A stretch of DNA of 64,000 bases from Mytilus trossulus (Eukaryota), in contig NC_086374.1 in the NCBI RefSeq assembly GCF_036588685.1, forward strand, positions 100,502,001-100,566,000. Direction: 5' to 3'. The notes below the pieces were generated by a model. It made no database searches. It saw only the letters and a list, made by a program, of their open reading frames with translations, and was not told the DNA's origin. The position numbers and the translations under genes were made by a program. This document shows, in pieces, positions 19,349 through 33,949 of this stretch (position 1 is its first letter; the number at the start of each line of letters is the position of its first letter).

Positions 19349-19949
19349 TATATAATTTTTGGAAGAACGTAGCTTCTGAAAGAAATATTGTTCAAACAAG
19401 ACGTTCCAGTGGAGTTTTTTTAAAGATATTTTGAAATGTTTACGACCCACGATGAACACTAAGATACGAGAACAGTTCTCGTTATACCTTTTGGTCAGGT
19501 GAGCTTAAATGATGTTCATTTAGCCATGTTAAAATGCCTGCCAAGTTTCCAAAGTATCATTCACAAATATTGTTTGAGACACTGCCAGAAGAAAATAAAT
19601 GAACGAGTATATGTAAAGCTCAGACACAAAATACTAATTATAATATCAATGTCTGTGCTTGATTGTAAATCGTCTGAATATGTTGATTGAAATACCTGGC
19701 TGTTATATTTCTCAACGAAAAATACCACGATAATCGCAAGTTTTTTGGCGTCAGTCGCCCGTCGTAAGAGACAGTGCATACCCATTGAGGGGAACCAAAC
19801 GCATGTAATAGAGGGATGACATGGGGTAAACATTCCCCAAGTCATGCTTTATTTGTATCCCCCCTTGTTTTCCTTCTTTTTCTCGTATCCTCTTTTCCCC
19901 ACATCCTCTCTTTTTCTATCCTCATATCCCACGTTCCCACATGTTCTAA

Positions 19950-26100: not shown

Positions 26101-28112
26101 ACTAAAAGGAGGTATGAGGTACACTCCGGTATTCAACAAAAAGACAGACATCTGTATAAAAAGACAAGGCTCTATAGACACGGATACTTTAATAGTGGAA
26201 AGCTATATTAATAACATTCGTAATAAGTATTTTATTTGCATGCATGTGACATGCATTTGTAAGTACATGGTACTATTCAACAAATGTCAAGAAAACATCA
26301 AACAGTGTTATAATACATGTATAAGATTGCACAATGTAATTCTAGTCAAGAAAGACTAAATTACCAAATTTTAAAAATTGCATAGTTAAATCTATTGATA
26401 AAACTTCAAAGCTAAATGAGAAATTTGATAGGTGTCATTTTAGGTAAGTAAAGTGGGACCTTTTGGACCTTTGTTATATATAATTGACTCTTTGACTTAA
26501 TGCACAAATGTTGTTTTTATTGACCCGATTCTTTGCTTTTTAAGTTCGTTTTTAATTATTTGAGATTGGAGAAGATGGTACCAGTTAGATCCTTTGGAAT
26601 CATTTAAACTGCATGAGTGCAAATTACGTCTCTTTACTATTGCTAATAAAAGGTGCATGTTCTTCTTTGTATCATGAAAGGCAAGATTACATTTAGGACT
26701 TTATTAAAACAGGGTTATTGATTTATTAAATTATATAACTTAGGCCATACCATAACCAATGAAAAAATGTTGTTCTGTTCCTGCTTGCAAGTCGGCTTTT
26801 AATAAAATGTGCAGAAATAGAACTCATTCCCCCATAGATCGAATGTATATTAACATTCTAAAATGTGTCTTATTTTGCTCTAAAAAATAATTTAACAATG
26901 ATATATGTAAGAACACTACTCAAGAACACAATAAAAAAACTAGAAAATCTCCATTTATACCTTTTGAAATTCCATATATTAAATTTTGGACGAATCTTCG
27001 ATTTTATTTCAACGAAATCTGATTGATTGGTAACACGCAGTTTATTTTGAAAAACACAAAAAGTTAAAACTCACTTACACACAAAACAATGATAAAAACA
27101 TAAAGGGAAGAAAATATTTCATTTTTAAGTTTCTCTCCCCATTTGAATGACCATACATTCCATCAATGATTTAAATAAAGGTATAATTCAAGATAATTAT
27201 TTCTCGATCCTTTGATCTTTGATTTGTTGATAGTGAAAAAATTAAAAAGCATTTTCAGAACTTAAGTATTGAAAATTAGAGGCCATCAGAAAGAAAGATT
27301 AATAATATTTTTGTACCTTTCGACCTTTGGTAACCATTGTTGTATTTTTTTCGTTCTTTCTAACGCTGCTAGCTCCAGATGTGGAGTTTAGGGGACATTT
27401 ACACTAAAAATTACAGGATTAAAAATAAATAAAAATGAAAAATGACTGGAAATCTTGAACATTTCATTGCCAATTCCCAATTTACCTCTACCGAGACGTA
27501 AGTTATCTGCTTCTTTGTCAGAAAGTGAAAACAATAGTTTAAAATTTAAATTTTGCCATGGGTCGATTGTCTTTTTTTCTTGGTAAAACTATGCAAAACT
27601 ATAGTTGTTAATGTTTGTGTCATTTTGGTCTTTTGTGGATAGTTGTCTCATTGGCAATCATACCACATCTTCTTTTTTATACATATTTTTTTTGTCGAAC
27701 TTTTGAAATATGCTTTATATACGTTCTTCGTTCACTTACAATCAATAAAAGCATCACTTTGGAAATTCATTGCGTCTTTAATGGACAATCAAATACTGCT
27801 GTAAAATAATCGAATTTAGACGTTGATATCTCTTGATTTCTCTTGATTTCTTGAGGCGTATATATATTCTCAAATATCCTACGACTATTTCAAAATTTAA
27901 TTTTAAAACTTTATTTCAATCAAGAGTTTCCTCCCATTGAATGCTTTAAAGTTGAGATAATTTTAAGATATATTAAATTCGTTAAAAATTATCGTATTAA
28001 TTACGTAACACAATCGTTTAAGAGTGAGAAAAAACACCGCAGAAGTATAACTGATGTTTGAACTATCTAAATATATAAATTATTATAATAAATTTTATTT
28101 CTTTGATTTCAG

Positions 28113-28405
28113 GACCAAACTCAAACCAGAGAAGAAGAGGCAGACAAACATATACAAGGTTTCAAACATTAGAACTAGAAAAAGAATTCAAATTCAATAG
28201 ATACCTCACGAGACGGAGACGAATAGAACTTTCTCATATGTTGTGTTTGACTGAAAGACAAATTAAAATTTGGTTTCAAAATAGAAGAATGAAAGAAAAG
28301 AAAGAACTATTAGCAATAAAAGAAATAAATGAACAGAATAAATCTCCAGAAAAAACTGTTATTAAACCGGTATCACCTGTGTCTTCAGGCGATGCATCAA
28401 GCTGA
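28113..28405 (+). CDS. Lox2: Hox gene Lox2, coding exon 2 (homeodomain 28130-28309 plus Ubd-A parapeptide)
   Basis: Acceptor tttctttgatttcAG|GA at 28112/28113. The translation is [93 protein letters not shown] and MKEKKE are Lox2-type residues (Lox4 has EFQFNHY/RKRRIEIAH/MKLKKE). Stop TGA at 28403-28405. Confidence 0.95.
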
Positions 28406-31400
28406 GAGATTATGTGTTCTTAGGTTCCTACCTCCACGGACTGAAGAGCTCATTCCCGAACATCCGGTGTTTCCTACACGAGAAGACTGAAACGAGAACT
28501 TTTACTTAAATTATACGTTTATCAGTAGAAAAATTAGAATTATTATTTCACATTATAGGATGACGGATACGGGAGCCCGACATTTGGTACTGCCCTAATA
28601 AACGAGAATGGTCTACCTATTAACGAGAATTTACGTGAATACGAAAGCGTTTCCAAGTGGCCTGCCATTTAAAATGGCGGATGCAAGTAGAGTGGAGATA
28701 TCATTTATTTTTACAAACCTTTTCATTTATCATCGCTATCGTCGCAAATGTTCATCGTCATAAATGTTTATAGTGCTATTATGTGTATATTTTTATGTAT
28801 GTACATTAACTTGTTGAAATTATATATAAAAAGATACTGCTCAAAATAATGTACTTCACATGTGAAAATTTCATGTTTTGCTTTGTATAAATCCGAATTC
28901 AAAGTTAACCATAATTTGATACTACTGAATTTTCTTGCCGTAAATAATAGTGCAATATAGGAGAAAAATACATTTACATGTTCTGTAATAGTAAAATTGC
29001 TTTTCGAACAAAAATCCGAATGTTGGAAGGAAAATTCAGATAATTCAGATCTGCAGTTGTTAGGGGAAAAAAATCTGCGATGGGGTTTACAATACTGTTC
29101 CTTTTCTACGGCTTTGATATATTTATTTTCATTTCATAAATTGCACCATTTAAATTCAAAATGCAAAGGACTCAAAATTTGTTTCCATAAAAGAAGAGTA
29201 AAGAGGGAATGTTGCCCATGATTTAGTTGTTCGATGTAGCTTAACTAGGATATAGTACTTAATTCGTTTTAAACATTTTTACTGTCAATTCTGTAAACCT
29301 GTCTGCAATATACTAATATCAAGAAGGAGCGAGTTTTTTTTTATTTTGCAATTTGGTTGGGTTTTTTTCCGGTTAGAATGTTCTAGGAGCTCGGTATTTT
29401 AATTTACCTTTTTCATACGTAATACAATGTAAATAAAATACACGTTTAAACAGTTAATTCCAGGAAATCTACTGAAATACATGTACAAGAAGCTTATTTT
29501 ATAAATAAATAATATTTTTAATGTTAAAACTTAAAATACACGATATAATGGATGATAGATTATCCTGTAACAATTGACCGCAGGTAGCCAATAAAATAGT
29601 GGACTAAATTAAACACTAATGTAAGAGATAAAAACTATATTTTTGTGTGGTCCTCACAATATCCATCTATGTTTTGTTTTATAACTAAATTATGACAAAT
29701 TTTATTCAATAATATTAACAATTTATAATTATGAACGATTCTACTTTAACTCCATCGATACATATCTATACTTGTGAATTTTTCTATAGAGTGTAATATT
29801 ACAATTAACAATTTTTCTTGTTAATTGTAATATTTTAAAAGAGAAATGATGAGCTGTAAATGATTAACTTTAGAAACTGAAAATGATATTTTTAGCGGTA
29901 ACGTATGCATATAGCTTAATCTTGCAGTTAGGTTTTCAGAGGTTACATAGCAACATATACAAAAATATGTAGATACAATAGTTATATAGAAGCTTTGTAG
30001 TTTATTTAATTTGTCACACCAGTCATGATGACTGAATTTTTCCTCAGGTTTTAATTTTGCGTTTTTACATTTGATTTTATATATATGTGTATTTTTTCAT
30101 CATTCTTAGGTGCTACAACGTAGATTGAAACTGCCTTTCAACATCTTTATTTCATTTTGCTCTGATGTCGTTTGTTTATAGGAATTCAAACCCGACCGGT
30201 CACATATTCAGTTAGAAAAAAATACGTCATCATTTTTATTTCTAAAAGTGGAAACCTTTTCATTTTCCCCCCGCATTTCCATTATTTCTAAATTATTAAA
30301 ACTTATAAAATTCACAACCCTAAACACAACCAATAAGTCAACTTCATTTCATATATTAATCTTTAAAAGTAAAGATATACACGATGATATCTGAATATAA
30401 ACTATCACACAACTAACATATTCTTTAGTTGATTACATATTCTTTTTTAGTAAGCCAATCAATACCATTACATTTTATGTTAAAAGAATTGAGCTGAATT
30501 CGTCGTAACGCGTTAAATCTATTATCTGGAATCAAATTCCCACTATTTAAATGTTTAATTTTGTTGATCACTCATTTTTGTATCTTAAAAATTTCAAAAT
30601 AATGCAACTCTTTTCAAACAATTCCCTAGAAACGAGATGATATTTTATATTTACCTTTATAAGATAGGCAGAGATCCCTTAATTTTAACCTATATGTATT
30701 TATAATTTCATAACGAGAATAATTAGAATTAGCAAAGAAACAAATTCCAAGTTTTGATTATGTTTTATCCTTGTAATAATTAACTGTATTTATGTTTCTC
30801 GATGGTATACATGTAGTTAGTTGTCAAATCATCAAGAGTGTGAAGAGCATTTGGGCATCCAACTTTTTAGAGCATTCGAGAAAAATATTTTAAGTATTCG
30901 AGCACACGATTTGTTTTAAGTATTCAAGCACCTGGGCTGTACAACATTTCATTAACCGAATTTTTACGACATGAAAAGAAATATGATGTACGTTGTCACT
31001 TTGCAATCAATCAATTAGTAAAATGACAAAAAGGTTAGAAAAAAGTAAGAACAAAAAGTTCCTAGTTGGAACAATTTTTAAGCCTATTTAAAGTTTCAAA
31101 TACTAAATATCAACATAAATTTTGATATTTAATGTTTGAAATTTCAGTTTTGATTGAACGCAGAGTTTACTAATTGTAATTAGTATAATACATATTTTAA
31201 CAAATTTTGCTACGTCAGATGTTTTCATATATTATAAAATGCATTCTGTTATTACAGTTTCTCATATGCTCTTTATGCTTAGTGTATTTACATTTGTGTA
31301 TTTCTCAACACTTTACAATAGTTGCTATCTACATATTTAGAAGCTAGTCAGAGCCTAGGTTGTTATGTAAAACTGTATAATTAAAGCTATTTATAGAAAA

Positions 31401-32040
31401 TAATTTCAGCAAGCAGACATCTCTGTTGAAAATAATGATCGAGAGGAACTTATTTAAAATTTTTTGGGAATTTGGGATTAACAAGAAAACTTTAAAAAAT
31501 TAAAAAAAAAATTCTTTGATGTAGTGCAAAACACTAATTCTACTTTCAAATCATTTAACATATAATTTTCCAGTACTATTACGAAATGAGTTTCGTGAAA
31601 AGGCTTTACCGTAACATTGGCTAAATAACCGTAACACAATTCTCATTTTTTGGGTTTAAAAGCAAAACATTTACAGATGCACTAATTTTCATCCGATATT
31701 CTATTTTGACAAACATTGGAAAATGTTAATTCAAAAGAAAGTGTACAGTTGTTCCCTAAGAAACAACAAAATATGATTTTCTTATGGCTATGTATGCTAT
31801 GACTTGTTCCTTATATATCAATAGACATATTGTATGTTTATTTTCATTTCGCATTATCTTATATATATATGTATATGTCATATTTGTTTTTCTTGAGAAA
31901 ATACCTTTTTATTAAACGATGGGGTAAATGAACATCATGTTCTACAATTGTATATTTATGTATCACTGTAAGTTAGTCTTTTTTTGAAAACCATAACGAG
32001 AAACGCAATAAATGACTATTGTTGATTTTTTATATAAAAT
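28406..32040 (+). other. Lox2: Putative long Lox2 3'UTR (AATAAA at ~29432, ~29507, ~29590, ~32007)
   Basis: No recognisable interspersed repeats until ~32090. The last AATAAA is followed by a GT/T-rich tract, and the AACGAGAA motif recurs up to 32002. The actual 3' end is unknown. Confidence 0.5.
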
Positions 32041-32120
32041 ATATGTGTTTATTCATTTTTGTCAATTTAAAGAACGTGTTGGTCCAAGAAGCTATCAAAG
32101 GTACCAGGCTTTATTCTAAT

Positions 32121-32162
32121 ACACCAGACTCGTTTCGTCTTCACAAGACTCATTAGTGACGC
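32121..32162 (-). ncRNA. Hammerhead ribozyme copy, degenerate (CUAAUGA; loop III shortened)
   Basis: Minus strand: GCGUCA-CUAAUGA-GUCU(uguga)AGAC-GAAAC-GA-GUC-UGGUGU. Confidence 0.75.
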
Positions 32163-33949
32163 TCAGAGCAGTTAAAAAGCCAAAAACAAGTACAACGTTG
32201 TAGCGCTGTTTTTTTCATTGTGATTGAAATTCATATCCCATGTCCAAGCTTTGTTTAAAGAACTCTTAAATCGTATCTGTTTTAAGACATTTTTGGATCC
32301 TCTTTTTGTGTCTGATTAACACACACCGCCACAAATTTGAAAGCTCAAATGTCATTGGCTGATGCCGTAAATGACAAGAACATAAAGTAAAACGGAGCCT
32401 TGTTAGATCTCGAACACTGTATTTTAATCAGATTGACACAGCAGTCAAAACAATAAAAAAACAACATTTGAGACGACTAGTTTCCAACTAAAGTACAAGT
32501 TCAAGACCTCATCACACAAAAGTAATAAGAAAAACGGATTGAAACTCCGTTTTTAAACAAATTAGACATTATACATATAATTTTAAATATACTTGTTACT
32601 TAGAATATTAGGGCTAAAATACTATGATATAGAACGAAATGTTTGTATAAACATGCATAGACAACTTAGAGATAATGCAAACGAATATAATACTTGCTCT
32701 TGTTATCACGATTAGTGAATTTATAGAACAGAGAACGCGAGAGAAAAAAAAAGTAAGTCGTATTTTTAGACATATAAATAAAGGTAACAGTAGTATACCG
32801 ATGTTCAAAACTCATAAATCAAAAGAAATAAAAACAAATCTGGGTCACAAACCAAAACCGAGTAAAACACATTAAACATAAGAGGAGAATGACGACACAA
32901 CATCAAAATGTATCACACACAAAAAACAGACTAAGCATTAGACAAAATCCGATGAGAATAACAACTATAACATCAAAACAAAATACATGAATTTGTGAGA
33001 AAGTGTTGGGTACTGTACACGAGACACAACGTACATTCTATTATAGGGCCTCATGGCATTTTATTTACTGGGTTTTCTACAAAGCTTTAATATTATTTTA
33101 ACTACAAAGCAAACATGCTCAAGATGCAGTCAAGTCAGATACAAAATAGAGTATTAATCCAATTAATCCCACAATCTTGAAAAGTGAAAAAATAAATAAA
33201 AACATATGAACAACGAAAATGATAAAATAGGTATTACTTAACTCATCATAGATACCTAGGTTGACAAATTTTGTATGGATATCAGTTAGGTACACGTTTA
33301 TAACTCCCTGAGGCAAAATTGGCTTTAGAGGGTCTTAACAGTATTTATTAACACTTTTTGATTTGATTCTCGAGTCTTACTGTGAATTTTGTTTCCATAG
33401 TTTTTGGTCTGGAGTGTATGCAATTGAAAGTCTTTTAACAGCACGTGTCGAACATACTGGAATGATATCATATATGCCATAAATCAGATGACCAACAACG
33501 ATTATTTAATTAGAGGTAACAGTAGTCGTCCACCTACATTCATCATAAAGAAGATACAAATCACGGTAAAATCCGAGGGAATCGCATCAAATATAACAGG
33601 AATAACATCTATAGGGAAAGCCTTTTTTTCTGTTATGCATAATACTCTTTTTTTTATTATCAAGTAAAAGGATATATATGGTAACTAATAACAAATTAAA
33701 AGGATAATAACAGTTGCAAAAAATACGAGACGACAAAGCAATTAATACATACCAATAAGTATTGGACCTACAAAGAAACAAACAAATCAAGAACGGAATC
33801 CATATGATAAGAATAACCTCTTTCAGATAAAAATATATAGTTCGATAACTTACGAATCTCGTACGAAGACGGTATAGATAATGATTTTTCATTCGTATTT
33901 TTTTGCAGTCTCTCCACCATCATACCCATGAACTTTACAAAATATAGAA

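What the first reader, a model, noticed from the sequence alone, without database searches (positions are those of the whole stretch)
28478..32002. Octamer AACGAGAA repeated through the Lox2 3'UTR: signature of an unidentified Hox-regulating miRNA or RBP
Exact AACGAGAA occurs at 28491, 28601, 28622, 30712 and 31995, with ACGAGAA at 28478 and AACGAGA at 30631. All are on the sense strand with unrelated flanks, and I saw no reverse-complement copy in the interval. A rough expectation for this 8-mer in 3.6 kb at ~70% AT is below 0.1. The set has the geometry of miRNA sites (8mer, 7mer-A1, 7mer-m8) for seed nt2-8 = UCUCGUU, including two closely spaced pairs. I cannot match that seed to a miRNA I know. 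By analogy, miR-iab-4/8 repress Ubx/abd-A and miR-196 represses Hox8, so this could mark a lophotrochozoan counterpart, for example a star arm of a Hox-cluster miR-10 paralogue (speculation). No convincing precursor was seen in this window.
Basis: partly seen in the sequence, partly recalled or inferred. Interest (0 to 1): 0.85.

Follow-up and report, generated by a model that had tools for sequence, protein, structure and literature searches.

The report
miR-1991-3p target sites in Lox2 3'UTR
The repeated octamer AACGAGAA downstream of the mussel Hox gene Lox2 is the exact target site for one arm of mir-1991, a microRNA gene that sits in the posterior part of the same Hox cluster; the same site follows the stop codon of five other Hox genes, so mir-1991 probably dampens more anterior Hox genes, as iab-4/8 does in flies and miR-196 in vertebrates.

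Summary
Five exact sense-strand AACGAGAA and two 7-mer variants lie at the stated coordinates, with no antisense copy. The genome-wide rate predicts 0.11 octamers in this stretch.

AACGAGAA is the canonical 8mer site for miR-1991-3p (UUCUCGUUUCACAGGGUAUAUU, seed UCUCGUU). That arm was sequenced in oyster, where it is at least as abundant as the 5p arm.

This genome has one mir-1991 hairpin (Rfam RF03858, 73.9 bits against a cut-off of 66). Its 3p arm is 22/22 identical to the oyster's. It lies between the Post1- and Post2-like homeoboxes, 2.35 Mb upstream of the window.

- **Other Hox genes:** sense ACGAGAA lies within 250 nt of the stop codon in 6 of 9 Hox genes, against 1 of 40 non-Hox homeobox controls.
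- **Unbiased search:** ACGAGAA is the top 7-mer in a de novo search of the proximal Hox 3' regions.
- **Extra pairing:** 4 of 14 sites also carry CCCT placed to pair with miRNA nt 13-16. The Hox3 site pairs nt 1-10 and 12-18.
- **mRNA extent:** RNA-like contigs cover the Lox2 3'UTR from exon 2 to 31985.

Repression itself and conservation across species remain untested. I class this as a new member of a known kind (Hox-embedded miRNA acting on Hox genes).

The parts
28113..28405 (+). Lox2 last exon with the homeobox and UbdA-type tail; stop TGA at 28403-28405
   Evidence: Translation. Best named relatives are Lox2 of Antalis, Bulinus and Steromphala; a Mytilus galloprovincialis Antp-family protein is 95% identical. 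Pfam homeodomain hit at window 28133-28303.
28406..32030 (+). Lox2 3'UTR, about 3.6 kb; the 3' end is inferred from AATAAA at 32009-32014
   Evidence: RNA-like contigs of runs X3 and X2 tile 28172-31985, with zero depth in the upstream intron bin and beyond 32316. The 3' end is not directly shown.
28478..28484 (+). miR-1991-3p 7mer-A1 site (ACGAGAA), +73 from the stop
28491..28498 (+). miR-1991-3p 8mer site, +86
   Evidence: duplex -14.8 kcal/mol
28593..28608 (+). miR-1991-3p 8mer site (28601-28608) with CCCT (28593-28596) placed to pair with miRNA nt 13-16; it overlaps a proximal AATAAA (28597-28602)
   Evidence: (duplex -19.3 kcal/mol, equal to the best of 500 random UTR 30-mers)
28622..28629 (+). 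miR-1991-3p 8mer site, +217
30624..30637 (+). miR-1991-3p 7mer-m8 site (30631-30637; contiguous match to nt 2-10) with CCCT (30624-30627) for nt 13-16
   Evidence: (-18.3 kcal/mol)
30712..30719 (+). miR-1991-3p 8mer site, +2307
31995..32002 (+). miR-1991-3p 8mer site, +3590, 7 nt upstream of the distal AATAAA
   Evidence: RNA contigs end at 31985, so inclusion in the mRNA is inferred.
31922..31928 (+). single 7mer-A1 site (GGGTAAA) for the other arm, miR-1991-5p

Best explanation
The octamers are canonical seed sites (five 8mer, one 7mer-A1, one 7mer-m8) for miR-1991-3p in the roughly 3.6 kb 3'UTR of Lox2.

mir-1991 is a miR-10-family hairpin in the posterior part of the Hox cluster. In this genome it lies at G000:C2:98150461-98150526 on the minus strand, between the Post1-like and Post2-like homeoboxes.

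Proposed mechanism (inferred): where mir-1991 is transcribed with the posterior genes, its 3p arm loads into Argonaute and pairs through nt 2-8 with these sites. At some sites nt 13-16 or more also pair. The result is lower translation and stability of Lox2 mRNA.

Single proximal sites would extend the effect to Lox4, Antp, Hox5, Hox3 and Hox2. This is a spiralian version of the 'Hox-embedded miRNA represses more anterior Hox genes' circuit.

Shown here: the motif, its enrichment, the exact seed match, the presence, synteny and integrity of the miRNA gene, and the extra 3' pairing. Shown in the literature for oyster only: that the 3p arm is made with this 5' end. Inferred: expression of the miRNA in this species, Argonaute binding and repression.
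For: 1. Seed identity. cgi-miR-1991-3p is UUCUCGUUUCACAGGGUAUAUU. About 2,812 oyster reads start at UUCUCGUU, against about 2,192 for the 5p arm.

2. The gene is in this genome. There is one exact 18-mer hit in 1.3 Gb. Rfam RF03858 scores 73.9 bits against a gathering score of 66, E 1e-14. The hairpin folds at -29.3 kcal/mol, z -4.05. The 3p arm is 22/22 identical to oyster. It lies between the Post1-like (C2:98031983, minus) and Post2-like (C2:98326370, plus) homeoboxes, the position published for oyster, Lottia and Capitella.

3. Independent enrichment. Sense ACGAGAA lies within 250 nt of the stop in Lox2, Lox4 (+45), Antp (+154), Hox5 (+242), Hox3 (+25) and Hox2 (+20). From the genome rate of 5.58e-5 per base, P(>=5 of the 8 genes other than Lox2) = 2.8e-8. 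It stays at 0.01 even with a 4 kb window.

4. Controls. 1 of 40 non-Hox homeobox ORFs has the 7-mer in that position; Fisher P = 4e-5.

5. Unbiased search. ACGAGAA is the top 7-mer of 2,108 in the first 300 nt of the nine Hox 3' regions, P 8e-8. It is also the top seed-type 7-mer in the Lox2 UTR.

6. Strand bias. 14 sense and 2 antisense sites in about 40 kb of Hox 3' regions.

7. miRNA-specific 3' pairing. CCCT sits at the offset for nt 13-16 in 4 of 14 sites, P 3e-5. The Hox3 site pairs nt 1-10 and 12-18 at -26.9 kcal/mol; the Antp site reaches -21.1.

8. The sites lie in covered RNA.

9. Other taxa. Two mollusc-like Lox4 contigs from metagenomes carry 2-3 sites each, with a shared aAACGAGAAtgtag context.
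Against: - No small-RNA data for this species were examined, so expression of miR-1991-3p here is inferred from oyster.
- The RNA nature of runs X3 and X2 is the tool's guess. It is supported only by the coverage pattern.
- The last site is not inside a laid contig.
- A Lox2-like metagenome contig (L063) and about 15 clitellate annelid Lox2-type contigs have no site in 1 kb.
- Excluding Lox2, the 8mer count over 4 kb windows is not significant on its own (3 observed, 1.1 expected).
- In Drosophila, well-predicted Hox-miRNA sites had no major embryonic effect (PMC3290615). Real sites may therefore have subtle function.
- A supplement search of a Mytilus haemocyte miRNome paper found no small RNA containing UCUCGU.
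Confidence: 0.85

Rival explanations
1. The motif is bound by a sequence-specific RNA-binding protein (for example an SR-type or other purine-motif reader acting on stability, localisation or poly(A) site choice). The match to miR-1991-3p is then coincidental.
For: The motif is short and linear, and sits close to stop codons. One copy overlaps a proximal AATAAA (28597-28602). From memory, not tested: SELEX motifs of SRSF7 resemble ACGAGAGAY.
Against: Only a few arms of Hox-embedded miRNAs exist among 16,384 possible 7-mers, so an exact hit on one of them is unlikely by chance. The variation among sites follows 8mer, 7mer-A1 and 7mer-m8 boundaries. CCCT is enriched at the offset that pairs with miRNA nt 13-16, and the Hox3 duplex has 17 paired bases; a protein reading ACGAGAA would not predict either.
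Confidence: 0.05
2. The sites are real seed matches but have little or no effect. The cluster arose by chance and local micro-duplication in an AT-rich UTR, or miRNA and targets are never co-expressed.
For: 5 of 100 order-3 Markov simulations of the window give a comparable octamer cluster on one strand. Four Lox2 sites lie in two tight pairs that could be micro-duplications. Drosophila precedent shows weak phenotypes for predicted Hox-miRNA pairs. Annelid contigs lack sites.
Against: Proximal sites recur independently in five other Hox genes with unrelated flanks, with P 2.8e-8 and 1 of 40 controls. Sense sites outnumber antisense 14 to 2. Supplementary pairing is present. Two other taxa carry sites in Lox4.
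Confidence: 0.08
3. It is a DNA-level element (a transcription-factor, Polycomb or insulator motif) at the 3' ends of Hox genes.
For: Hox clusters are dense in cis-regulatory DNA. A YY1/Pho-like AAAATGGCGG lies at 28672-28681 (the motif is recalled from memory).
Against: The orientation is strictly sense. The sites lie inside the transcribed UTR just after stop codons. I could recall no DNA-binding motif that matches. The site-type boundaries and 3' pairing are specific to a miRNA.
Confidence: 0.02

Closest known systems
miR-iab-4 / miR-iab-8 acting on Ubx, abd-A and Antp (arthropods)
   Same: The miRNA hairpin is embedded in the posterior part of the Hox cluster. Multiple seed sites lie in the 3'UTRs of the neighbouring, more anterior UbdA-type genes (Lox2 and Lox4 are the spiralian UbdA-type genes). 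More than one mature product of the locus is used.
   Different: The hairpin family is unrelated (mir-1991 belongs to miR-10). The second product here is the other arm, not an antisense transcript. mir-1991 lies between Post1 and Post2, and in this genome it is 2.35 Mb from Lox2. Function is untested.
miR-196 acting on Hoxb8, Hoxc8 and Hoxa7 (vertebrates)
   Same: A posterior Hox-embedded miRNA has sites in several more anterior Hox 3'UTRs. One target is almost fully complementary: here Hox3, with nt 1-10 and 12-18 paired.
   Different: The Hox3 duplex has a bulged nt 11, so slicing as at Hoxb8 is unlikely. The sequence family is different. No experimental evidence exists here.
miR-10 and miR-993 (other miR-10-family Hox miRNAs)
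   Same: mir-1991 is a paralogue, and both arms of this family are known to be used (arm switching, PMC3049427). The 3p arm shares the core CUCGUUUC with my recollection of miR-993-3p (memory, not tested).
   Different: The seed is different (UCUCGUU). The mir-10 hairpin (C2:101072118) and the mir-10-like hairpin (C2:100624419) of this genome do not carry it on either arm.
K-box, Brd-box and GY-box motifs of Drosophila Notch-target 3'UTRs
   Same: Repeated 7-8-mers in the 3'UTRs of developmental regulators were noticed first and later explained as miRNA seed matches.
   Different: Here the cognate miRNA was already catalogued. Only the link to the target motif was missing.

Membership tests
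Canonical animal miRNA seed site (for miR-1991-3p) | Watson-Crick match to miRNA nt 2-7 or 2-8, with or without A opposite nt 1 | tested here: met
   Five 8mer, one 7mer-A1 and one 7mer-m8 in Lox2; seven further sites in five other Hox genes.
Canonical animal miRNA seed site (for miR-1991-3p) | The site lies in the 3'UTR of the mature mRNA | tested here: met
   RNA-like contigs cover 28172-31985, with none in the intron or downstream. Six of seven sites are covered and the seventh is inferred. The RNA nature of the runs is the tool's guess.
Canonical animal miRNA seed site (for miR-1991-3p) | The cognate miRNA gene is present and intact in the same genome | tested here: met
   RF03858 at 73.9 bits against a gathering score of 66; hairpin z -4.05; 3p arm 22/22 identical to oyster.
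Canonical animal miRNA seed site (for miR-1991-3p) | The mature miRNA with this 5' end is expressed | not tested
   Shown only for Crassostrea gigas in the literature (about 2,812 reads starting UUCUCGUU). No small-RNA run of this species was examined. A supplement search of a Mytilus haemocyte miRNome paper found no sequence containing the seed.
Canonical animal miRNA seed site (for miR-1991-3p) | The sites are preferentially conserved in orthologous UTRs | tested here: inconclusive
   Two unidentified mollusc-like Lox4 contigs carry 2-3 sites. A Lox2-like contig and the clitellate annelid contigs carry none. Bivalve orthologues could not be fetched.
Canonical animal miRNA seed site (for miR-1991-3p) | miRNA-dependent repression of the target | not testable with these tools
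   Needs reporter, inhibitor or knockout experiments.
mir-1991 precursor family (Rfam RF03858) | Covariance-model score above the gathering threshold | tested here: met
   73.9 bits against 66, E 1e-14, full length 1-66. It is the only hit above threshold in the genome.
mir-1991 precursor family (Rfam RF03858) | Position between Post2 and Post1 of the Hox cluster | tested here: met
   C2:98150461-98150526 lies between the Post1-like homeobox at 98031983 and the Post2-like homeobox at 98326370. The Post1 and Post2 names are inferred from homeodomain signatures.
Hox-embedded miRNA that represses more anterior Hox genes (posterior-prevalence type circuit) | Targets are Hox genes anterior to the miRNA locus, not the flanking posterior genes | tested here: met
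   Sites occur in Lox2, Lox4, Antp, Hox5, Hox3 and Hox2. None occur in 1.9 kb downstream of Post1 or Post2.
Hox-embedded miRNA that represses more anterior Hox genes (posterior-prevalence type circuit) | miRNA expression domain overlaps or abuts the target domains, and its loss de-represses the targets | not testable with these tools
   Only the oyster co-expression of miR-1991 with Post1 (r = 0.81) is published.

The most novel reading that the evidence does not exclude
mir-1991 is the spiralian functional counterpart of iab-4/8 and miR-196. Both of its arms together have seed sites in seven of the nine non-posterior Hox genes. The 3p arm hits Lox2, Lox4, Antp, Hox5, Hox3 and Hox2. The 5p arm has 8mers (AGGGTAAA) in Lox4, Lox5, Hox5 and Hox3. 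Lox2 carries the heaviest load and Hox3 has a near-complete duplex. If so, miRNA-mediated posterior dominance over Hox genes arose at least three times, from different Hox-embedded hairpins in the three bilaterian superclades.
Probability: 0.45. Interest if true: 0.78.

Novelty: new member of a known kind. Interest (0 to 1): 0.62.

Why it matters
Post-transcriptional control of Hox genes by miRNAs encoded inside the cluster is established for arthropods (iab-4/8) and vertebrates (miR-196, miR-10). For Spiralia only the existence and position of mir-1991 had been reported in the papers I could search; I found no target.

This analysis gives a concrete, testable target map:
- a named miRNA arm;
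- seven sites in Lox2;
- proximal sites in five further Hox genes;
- a 17-base-pair duplex in Hox3.

It makes the question of whether miRNA-based posterior prevalence is general to bilaterians directly testable in molluscs, using reporters, inhibitors and in situ hybridisation. It also shows that the arm usually treated as the 'star' of a miR-10 paralogue may be the one that matters for Hox regulation.

Tried and rejected
Orthologous Lox2 contigs of Mytilus galloprovincialis, Sinanodonta, Lottia and others (proteins P0001-P0025) could not be fetched. This blocked the direct conservation test.
- **Full-text search for the raw seed strings** returned 8,873 papers, mostly primers, and was useless.
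- **Rfam on the window** gave no family at gathering score.
- **Star arm of mir-10 itself, or of the mir-10-like hairpin between Lox2 and Lox4:** neither arm of either hairpin contains UCUCGU. The mir-100 arms also lack it (read by eye from the fold).
- **Mytilus haemocyte miRNome supplement:** no sequence with the seed. PMC11067994 has no supplement held as text.
- **The search of earlier findings by motif words:** The notes near this place concern other features and did not bear on this finding.
- **Taxon of the Lox4-like metagenome contig L102:** a protein search found nothing closer than Lottia at 80%, so it remains 'mollusc-like, unidentified'.
- **Crustacean-like Ubx/abd-A contig L120:** four AACGAGA copies sit in a GC- and purine-rich, AACGA-repetitive stretch. 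I treat them as compositional, not as evidence.
- **One gutless-worm Lox4-type gene** (contigs L095 and L097, which may be duplicates) has an 8mer at +239 that its congeners lack. I treat it as chance.
- **Read laying:** differences of organism D at the sites were not among the rows shown, so nothing can be said about conservation there. Organisms B and C are about 99% identical here and therefore uninformative.
- **Order-5 Markov null** (49 of 100 simulations with a comparable cluster): rejected as overfitted to a 64 kb training sequence and probably driven by low-complexity words (not checked).
Full report
**1. The observation**

The sequence holds exact AACGAGAA on the + strand at 28491, 28601, 28622, 30712 and 31995. 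ACGAGAA is at 28478 and AACGAGA at 30631. Neither the core ACGAGA nor either 7-mer occurs on the opposite strand in 28406-32100.

The sites follow a homeobox exon at 28113-28405, with stop TGA at 28403-28405. Its translation finds Lox2 proteins of Antalis, Bulinus and Steromphala among its best named relatives. A Mytilus galloprovincialis Antp-family protein is 95% identical. The genome is 1.30 Gb and mussel-like, and the window is G000:C2:100502001-100566000.

Genome-wide the octamer occurs 40,131 times on the forward strand. That is 0.11 expected in 3.6 kb, with Poisson P(>=5) = 1.3e-7. The count is inflated by a heptamer microsatellite, so the estimate is conservative.

One caveat applies. 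Simulated windows (order-3 Markov) show some comparable octamer cluster in 5 of 100 cases per strand. The cluster alone would not be compelling across a scan of many windows.

**2. Is it in the mRNA?**

I laid two RNA-like runs on 27900-33400: X3 from the same organism and X2 from a 99.6%-identical relative. Their kind is the tool's guess.

Their contigs tile 28172-31985. Depth is zero in the intron bin 27900-28083 and in 32316-32683 and 33052-33400. Two DNA runs cover most of those bins; 32500-32683 is empty in every run.

This supports a 3'UTR of about 3.6 kb. Both RNA contigs stop at 31985, at the end of a T-run. The last octamer (31995) and the AATAAA at 32009 lie just beyond, so inclusion of the last site is inferred.

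**3. Independent test in the other Hox genes**

A Pfam homeodomain search of the genome places nine homeoboxes on the + strand of C2, from 100.53 to 101.53 Mb. From their order and homeodomain signatures I name them Lox2, Lox4, Antp, Lox5, Hox5, Hox4, Hox3, Hox2 and Hox1. The names are inferred from order and signature residues, not from a tree.

Sense ACGAGAA lies within 250 nt of the stop codon in six of the nine:

| Gene | Position after the stop |
|---|---|
| Lox2 | +73, +87, +197, +218 |
| Lox4 | +45 |
| Antp | +154 |
| Hox5 | +242 |
| Hox3 | +25 |
| Hox2 | +20 |

The flanks are unrelated.

- **Against the genome rate.** The 7-mer occurs at 5.58e-5 per base per strand. The chance that at least 5 of the 8 genes other than Lox2 carry it in that window is 2.8e-8. 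The figure is 2e-5 for a 1 kb window and 0.01 for 4 kb.
- **Against controls.** Of 40 non-Hox homeobox ORFs treated the same way, 1 has a sense copy and 2 an antisense copy within 250 nt. Fisher P = 4e-5.
- **Unbiased search.** An enumeration of all 7-mers in the first 300 nt of the nine Hox 3' regions ranks ACGAGAA first, P 8e-8.

The motif is therefore a shared, sense-strand element of Hox 3'UTRs.

**4. The trans-acting factor**

The two miR-10-type hairpins that Rfam's mir-10 model finds in the cluster do not contain UCUCGU on either arm. These are mir-10, between Hox5 and Hox4, and a mir-10-like hairpin between Lox2 and Lox4.

Searching the supplements of the oyster miRNA catalogue (Xu et al. 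2014, PMC4138081) for the seed gave cgi-miR-1991-3p, UUCUCGUUUCACAGGGUAUAUU. Its nt 2-8 are UCUCGUU, so AACGAGAA is its 8mer site. In that data set about 2,812 reads begin at UUCUCGUU, against about 2,192 for the 5p arm. The 3p arm is thus a genuine, precisely processed product.

The same paper and a review place mir-1991 in the miR-10 family, between Post2 and Post1 in oyster, Lottia and Capitella.

In this genome the first 18 nt of the 3p arm match exactly once, at C2:98150466-98150483 on the minus strand.

- **Family.** The locus scores 73.9 bits against Rfam RF03858 (mir-1991), whose gathering score is 66. It is the only hit above threshold.
- **Fold.** It folds into a hairpin of -29.3 kcal/mol, z -4.05.
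- **Sequence.** Its 3p arm is identical to the oyster's over all 22 nt.
- **Position.** It lies between a Post1-like homeobox (98031983, minus) and a Post2-like homeobox (98326370, plus), 2.35 Mb upstream of the window.

**5. Evidence that the partner is this miRNA and not merely something that reads ACGAGAA**

In about 40 kb of Hox 3' regions there are 14 sense and 2 antisense sites of the three canonical types. None lie in the 1.9 kb downstream of Post1 or Post2.

Four of the 14 sites have CCCT at the offset that pairs with miRNA nt 13-16 (AGGG). The expected fraction is 1.4% per site, P 3e-5. They are Lox2 28601, Lox2 30631, Antp +154 and Hox3 +25.

The predicted duplexes are:
- -19.3 and -18.3 kcal/mol for the two Lox2 sites, against a mean of -6.2 for random UTR 30-mers;
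- -21.1 for Antp;
- -26.9 for Hox3, where nt 1-10 and 12-18 pair around a single bulged nt 11.

A protein that recognises a 7-mer would not predict this.

**6. The other arm, and other miRNAs**

The 8mer for miR-1991-5p (AGGGTAAA) occurs six times in sense in the same regions: twice each in Lox4 and Hox5, once each in Lox5 and Hox3. The expectation is 0.88, P 3e-4.

In three of these sites, and in one further 7mer-m8 site in Hox3, a C precedes the match, extending it to nt 2-9.

TACGGGTA, the 8mer for miR-100, follows the miR-1991-3p site by roughly 20 nt in Hox5 and Hox3. A 7mer-A1 lies in Hox2. The mir-100 locus itself is next to let-7 on C6.

**7. Other taxa**

A scan of metagenome contigs with the Lox2 peptide returned 80 Antp-class loci.

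- **Lox4-like contigs.** Two mollusc-like contigs from unidentified taxa carry sites. L102 has them at +131 (8mer), +165 and +471. L104 has them at +372 (8mer) and +414. Both share the context aAACGAGAAtgtag. A third Lox4-like contig, L091, has none.
- **Lox2-like and annelid contigs.** A Lox2-like contig (L063) and many clitellate annelid Lox2- and Lox4-type contigs have none in 1 kb.

The circuit may therefore be molluscan, or sites may turn over quickly.

**8. Verdict**

The miRNA is miR-1991-3p.

| Status | Item |
|---|---|
| Shown here | Motif, enrichment and strand bias; seed identity; gene presence, synteny and integrity; supplementary pairing; UTR coverage |
| From the literature | The mature 3p arm, in oyster only |
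| Inferred | Expression in this species and repression |

In the papers I could search, I found mir-1991's existence, family and position, and its co-expression with Post1. I found no target assignment. I therefore rate it a new member of a known kind: a Hox-embedded miRNA acting on more anterior Hox genes.

Noticed in passing
G000:C2:100624419-100624489 (+), locus L011:1501-1571; outside the window, between Lox2 and Lox4: A miR-10-like hairpin (RF00104 46.0 bits, just under the 47.5 cut-off; -36.5 kcal/mol in a 121-nt context). Its 5p arm reads UUUACCCUGUAGAACCGAGCGAGU. It may be the spiralian 'mir-993 / mir-10b'-type paralogue. Neither arm has the UCUCGUU seed.
   Followed up: partly
L004 (Hox5) +260, L006 (Hox3) +48, L007 (Hox2) +153 after the stop codons: miR-100 seed sites: TACGGGTA 8mers in Hox5 and Hox3, and a 7mer-A1 in Hox2. 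In Hox5 and Hox3 they follow the miR-1991-3p site by roughly 20 nt. ACGGGTA was the second-ranked 7-mer in the de novo search (P 7e-6).
   Followed up: partly
L001 (Lox4) +1035 and +1088; L003 (Lox5) +32; L004 (Hox5) +700 and +3788; L006 (Hox3) +2900; window 31922-31928: Six sense 8mers AGGGTAAA for the other arm, miR-1991-5p (0.88 expected, P 3e-4). Several are extended to CAGGGTAAA (match to nt 2-9). Lox2 has one 7mer-A1. Both arms of mir-1991 may target Hox genes.
   Followed up: partly
G000:C2:98031983 (minus, L039) and C2:98326370 (plus, L046): The Post1-like and Post2-like homeoboxes lie 2.2-2.5 Mb from Lox2 and are oriented divergently. The posterior pair with mir-1991 is thus split from the otherwise collinear nine-gene cluster (100.53-101.53 Mb, all on the + strand).
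   Followed up: no
window 28597-28602: A proximal AATAAA overlaps the 8mer at 28601. If it is used, a short Lox2 isoform would keep only the first three or four miR-1991-3p sites. RNA-like contigs run through it.
   Followed up: no
window 32130-32315 and 32684-33051: Highly repeated elements just downstream of the UTR. Summed contig depth reaches 4e5 in the DNA runs, with many loose ends. They are also present in the RNA-like runs.
   Followed up: no
genome-wide, e.g. G000:C1:318849-318863 and C1:638518-638532: AACGAGA occurs as a tandem heptamer microsatellite (octamer hits 7 nt apart). This inflates the genomic background count of the motif.
   Followed up: no
window 19466-19483: A short inverted repeat on the minus strand, AACGAGAAC-TG-TTCTCGT. 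The stem is too short for a pre-miRNA and it was not examined further.
   Followed up: no
L009:373-451 (minus strand) and L009:1501-1571 (minus strand), on G000:C6 near 4.08 Mb: A canonical mir-100 / let-7 cluster: RF00104 at 61.6 bits and RF00027 at 62.1 bits, about 1.1 kb apart.
   Followed up: no
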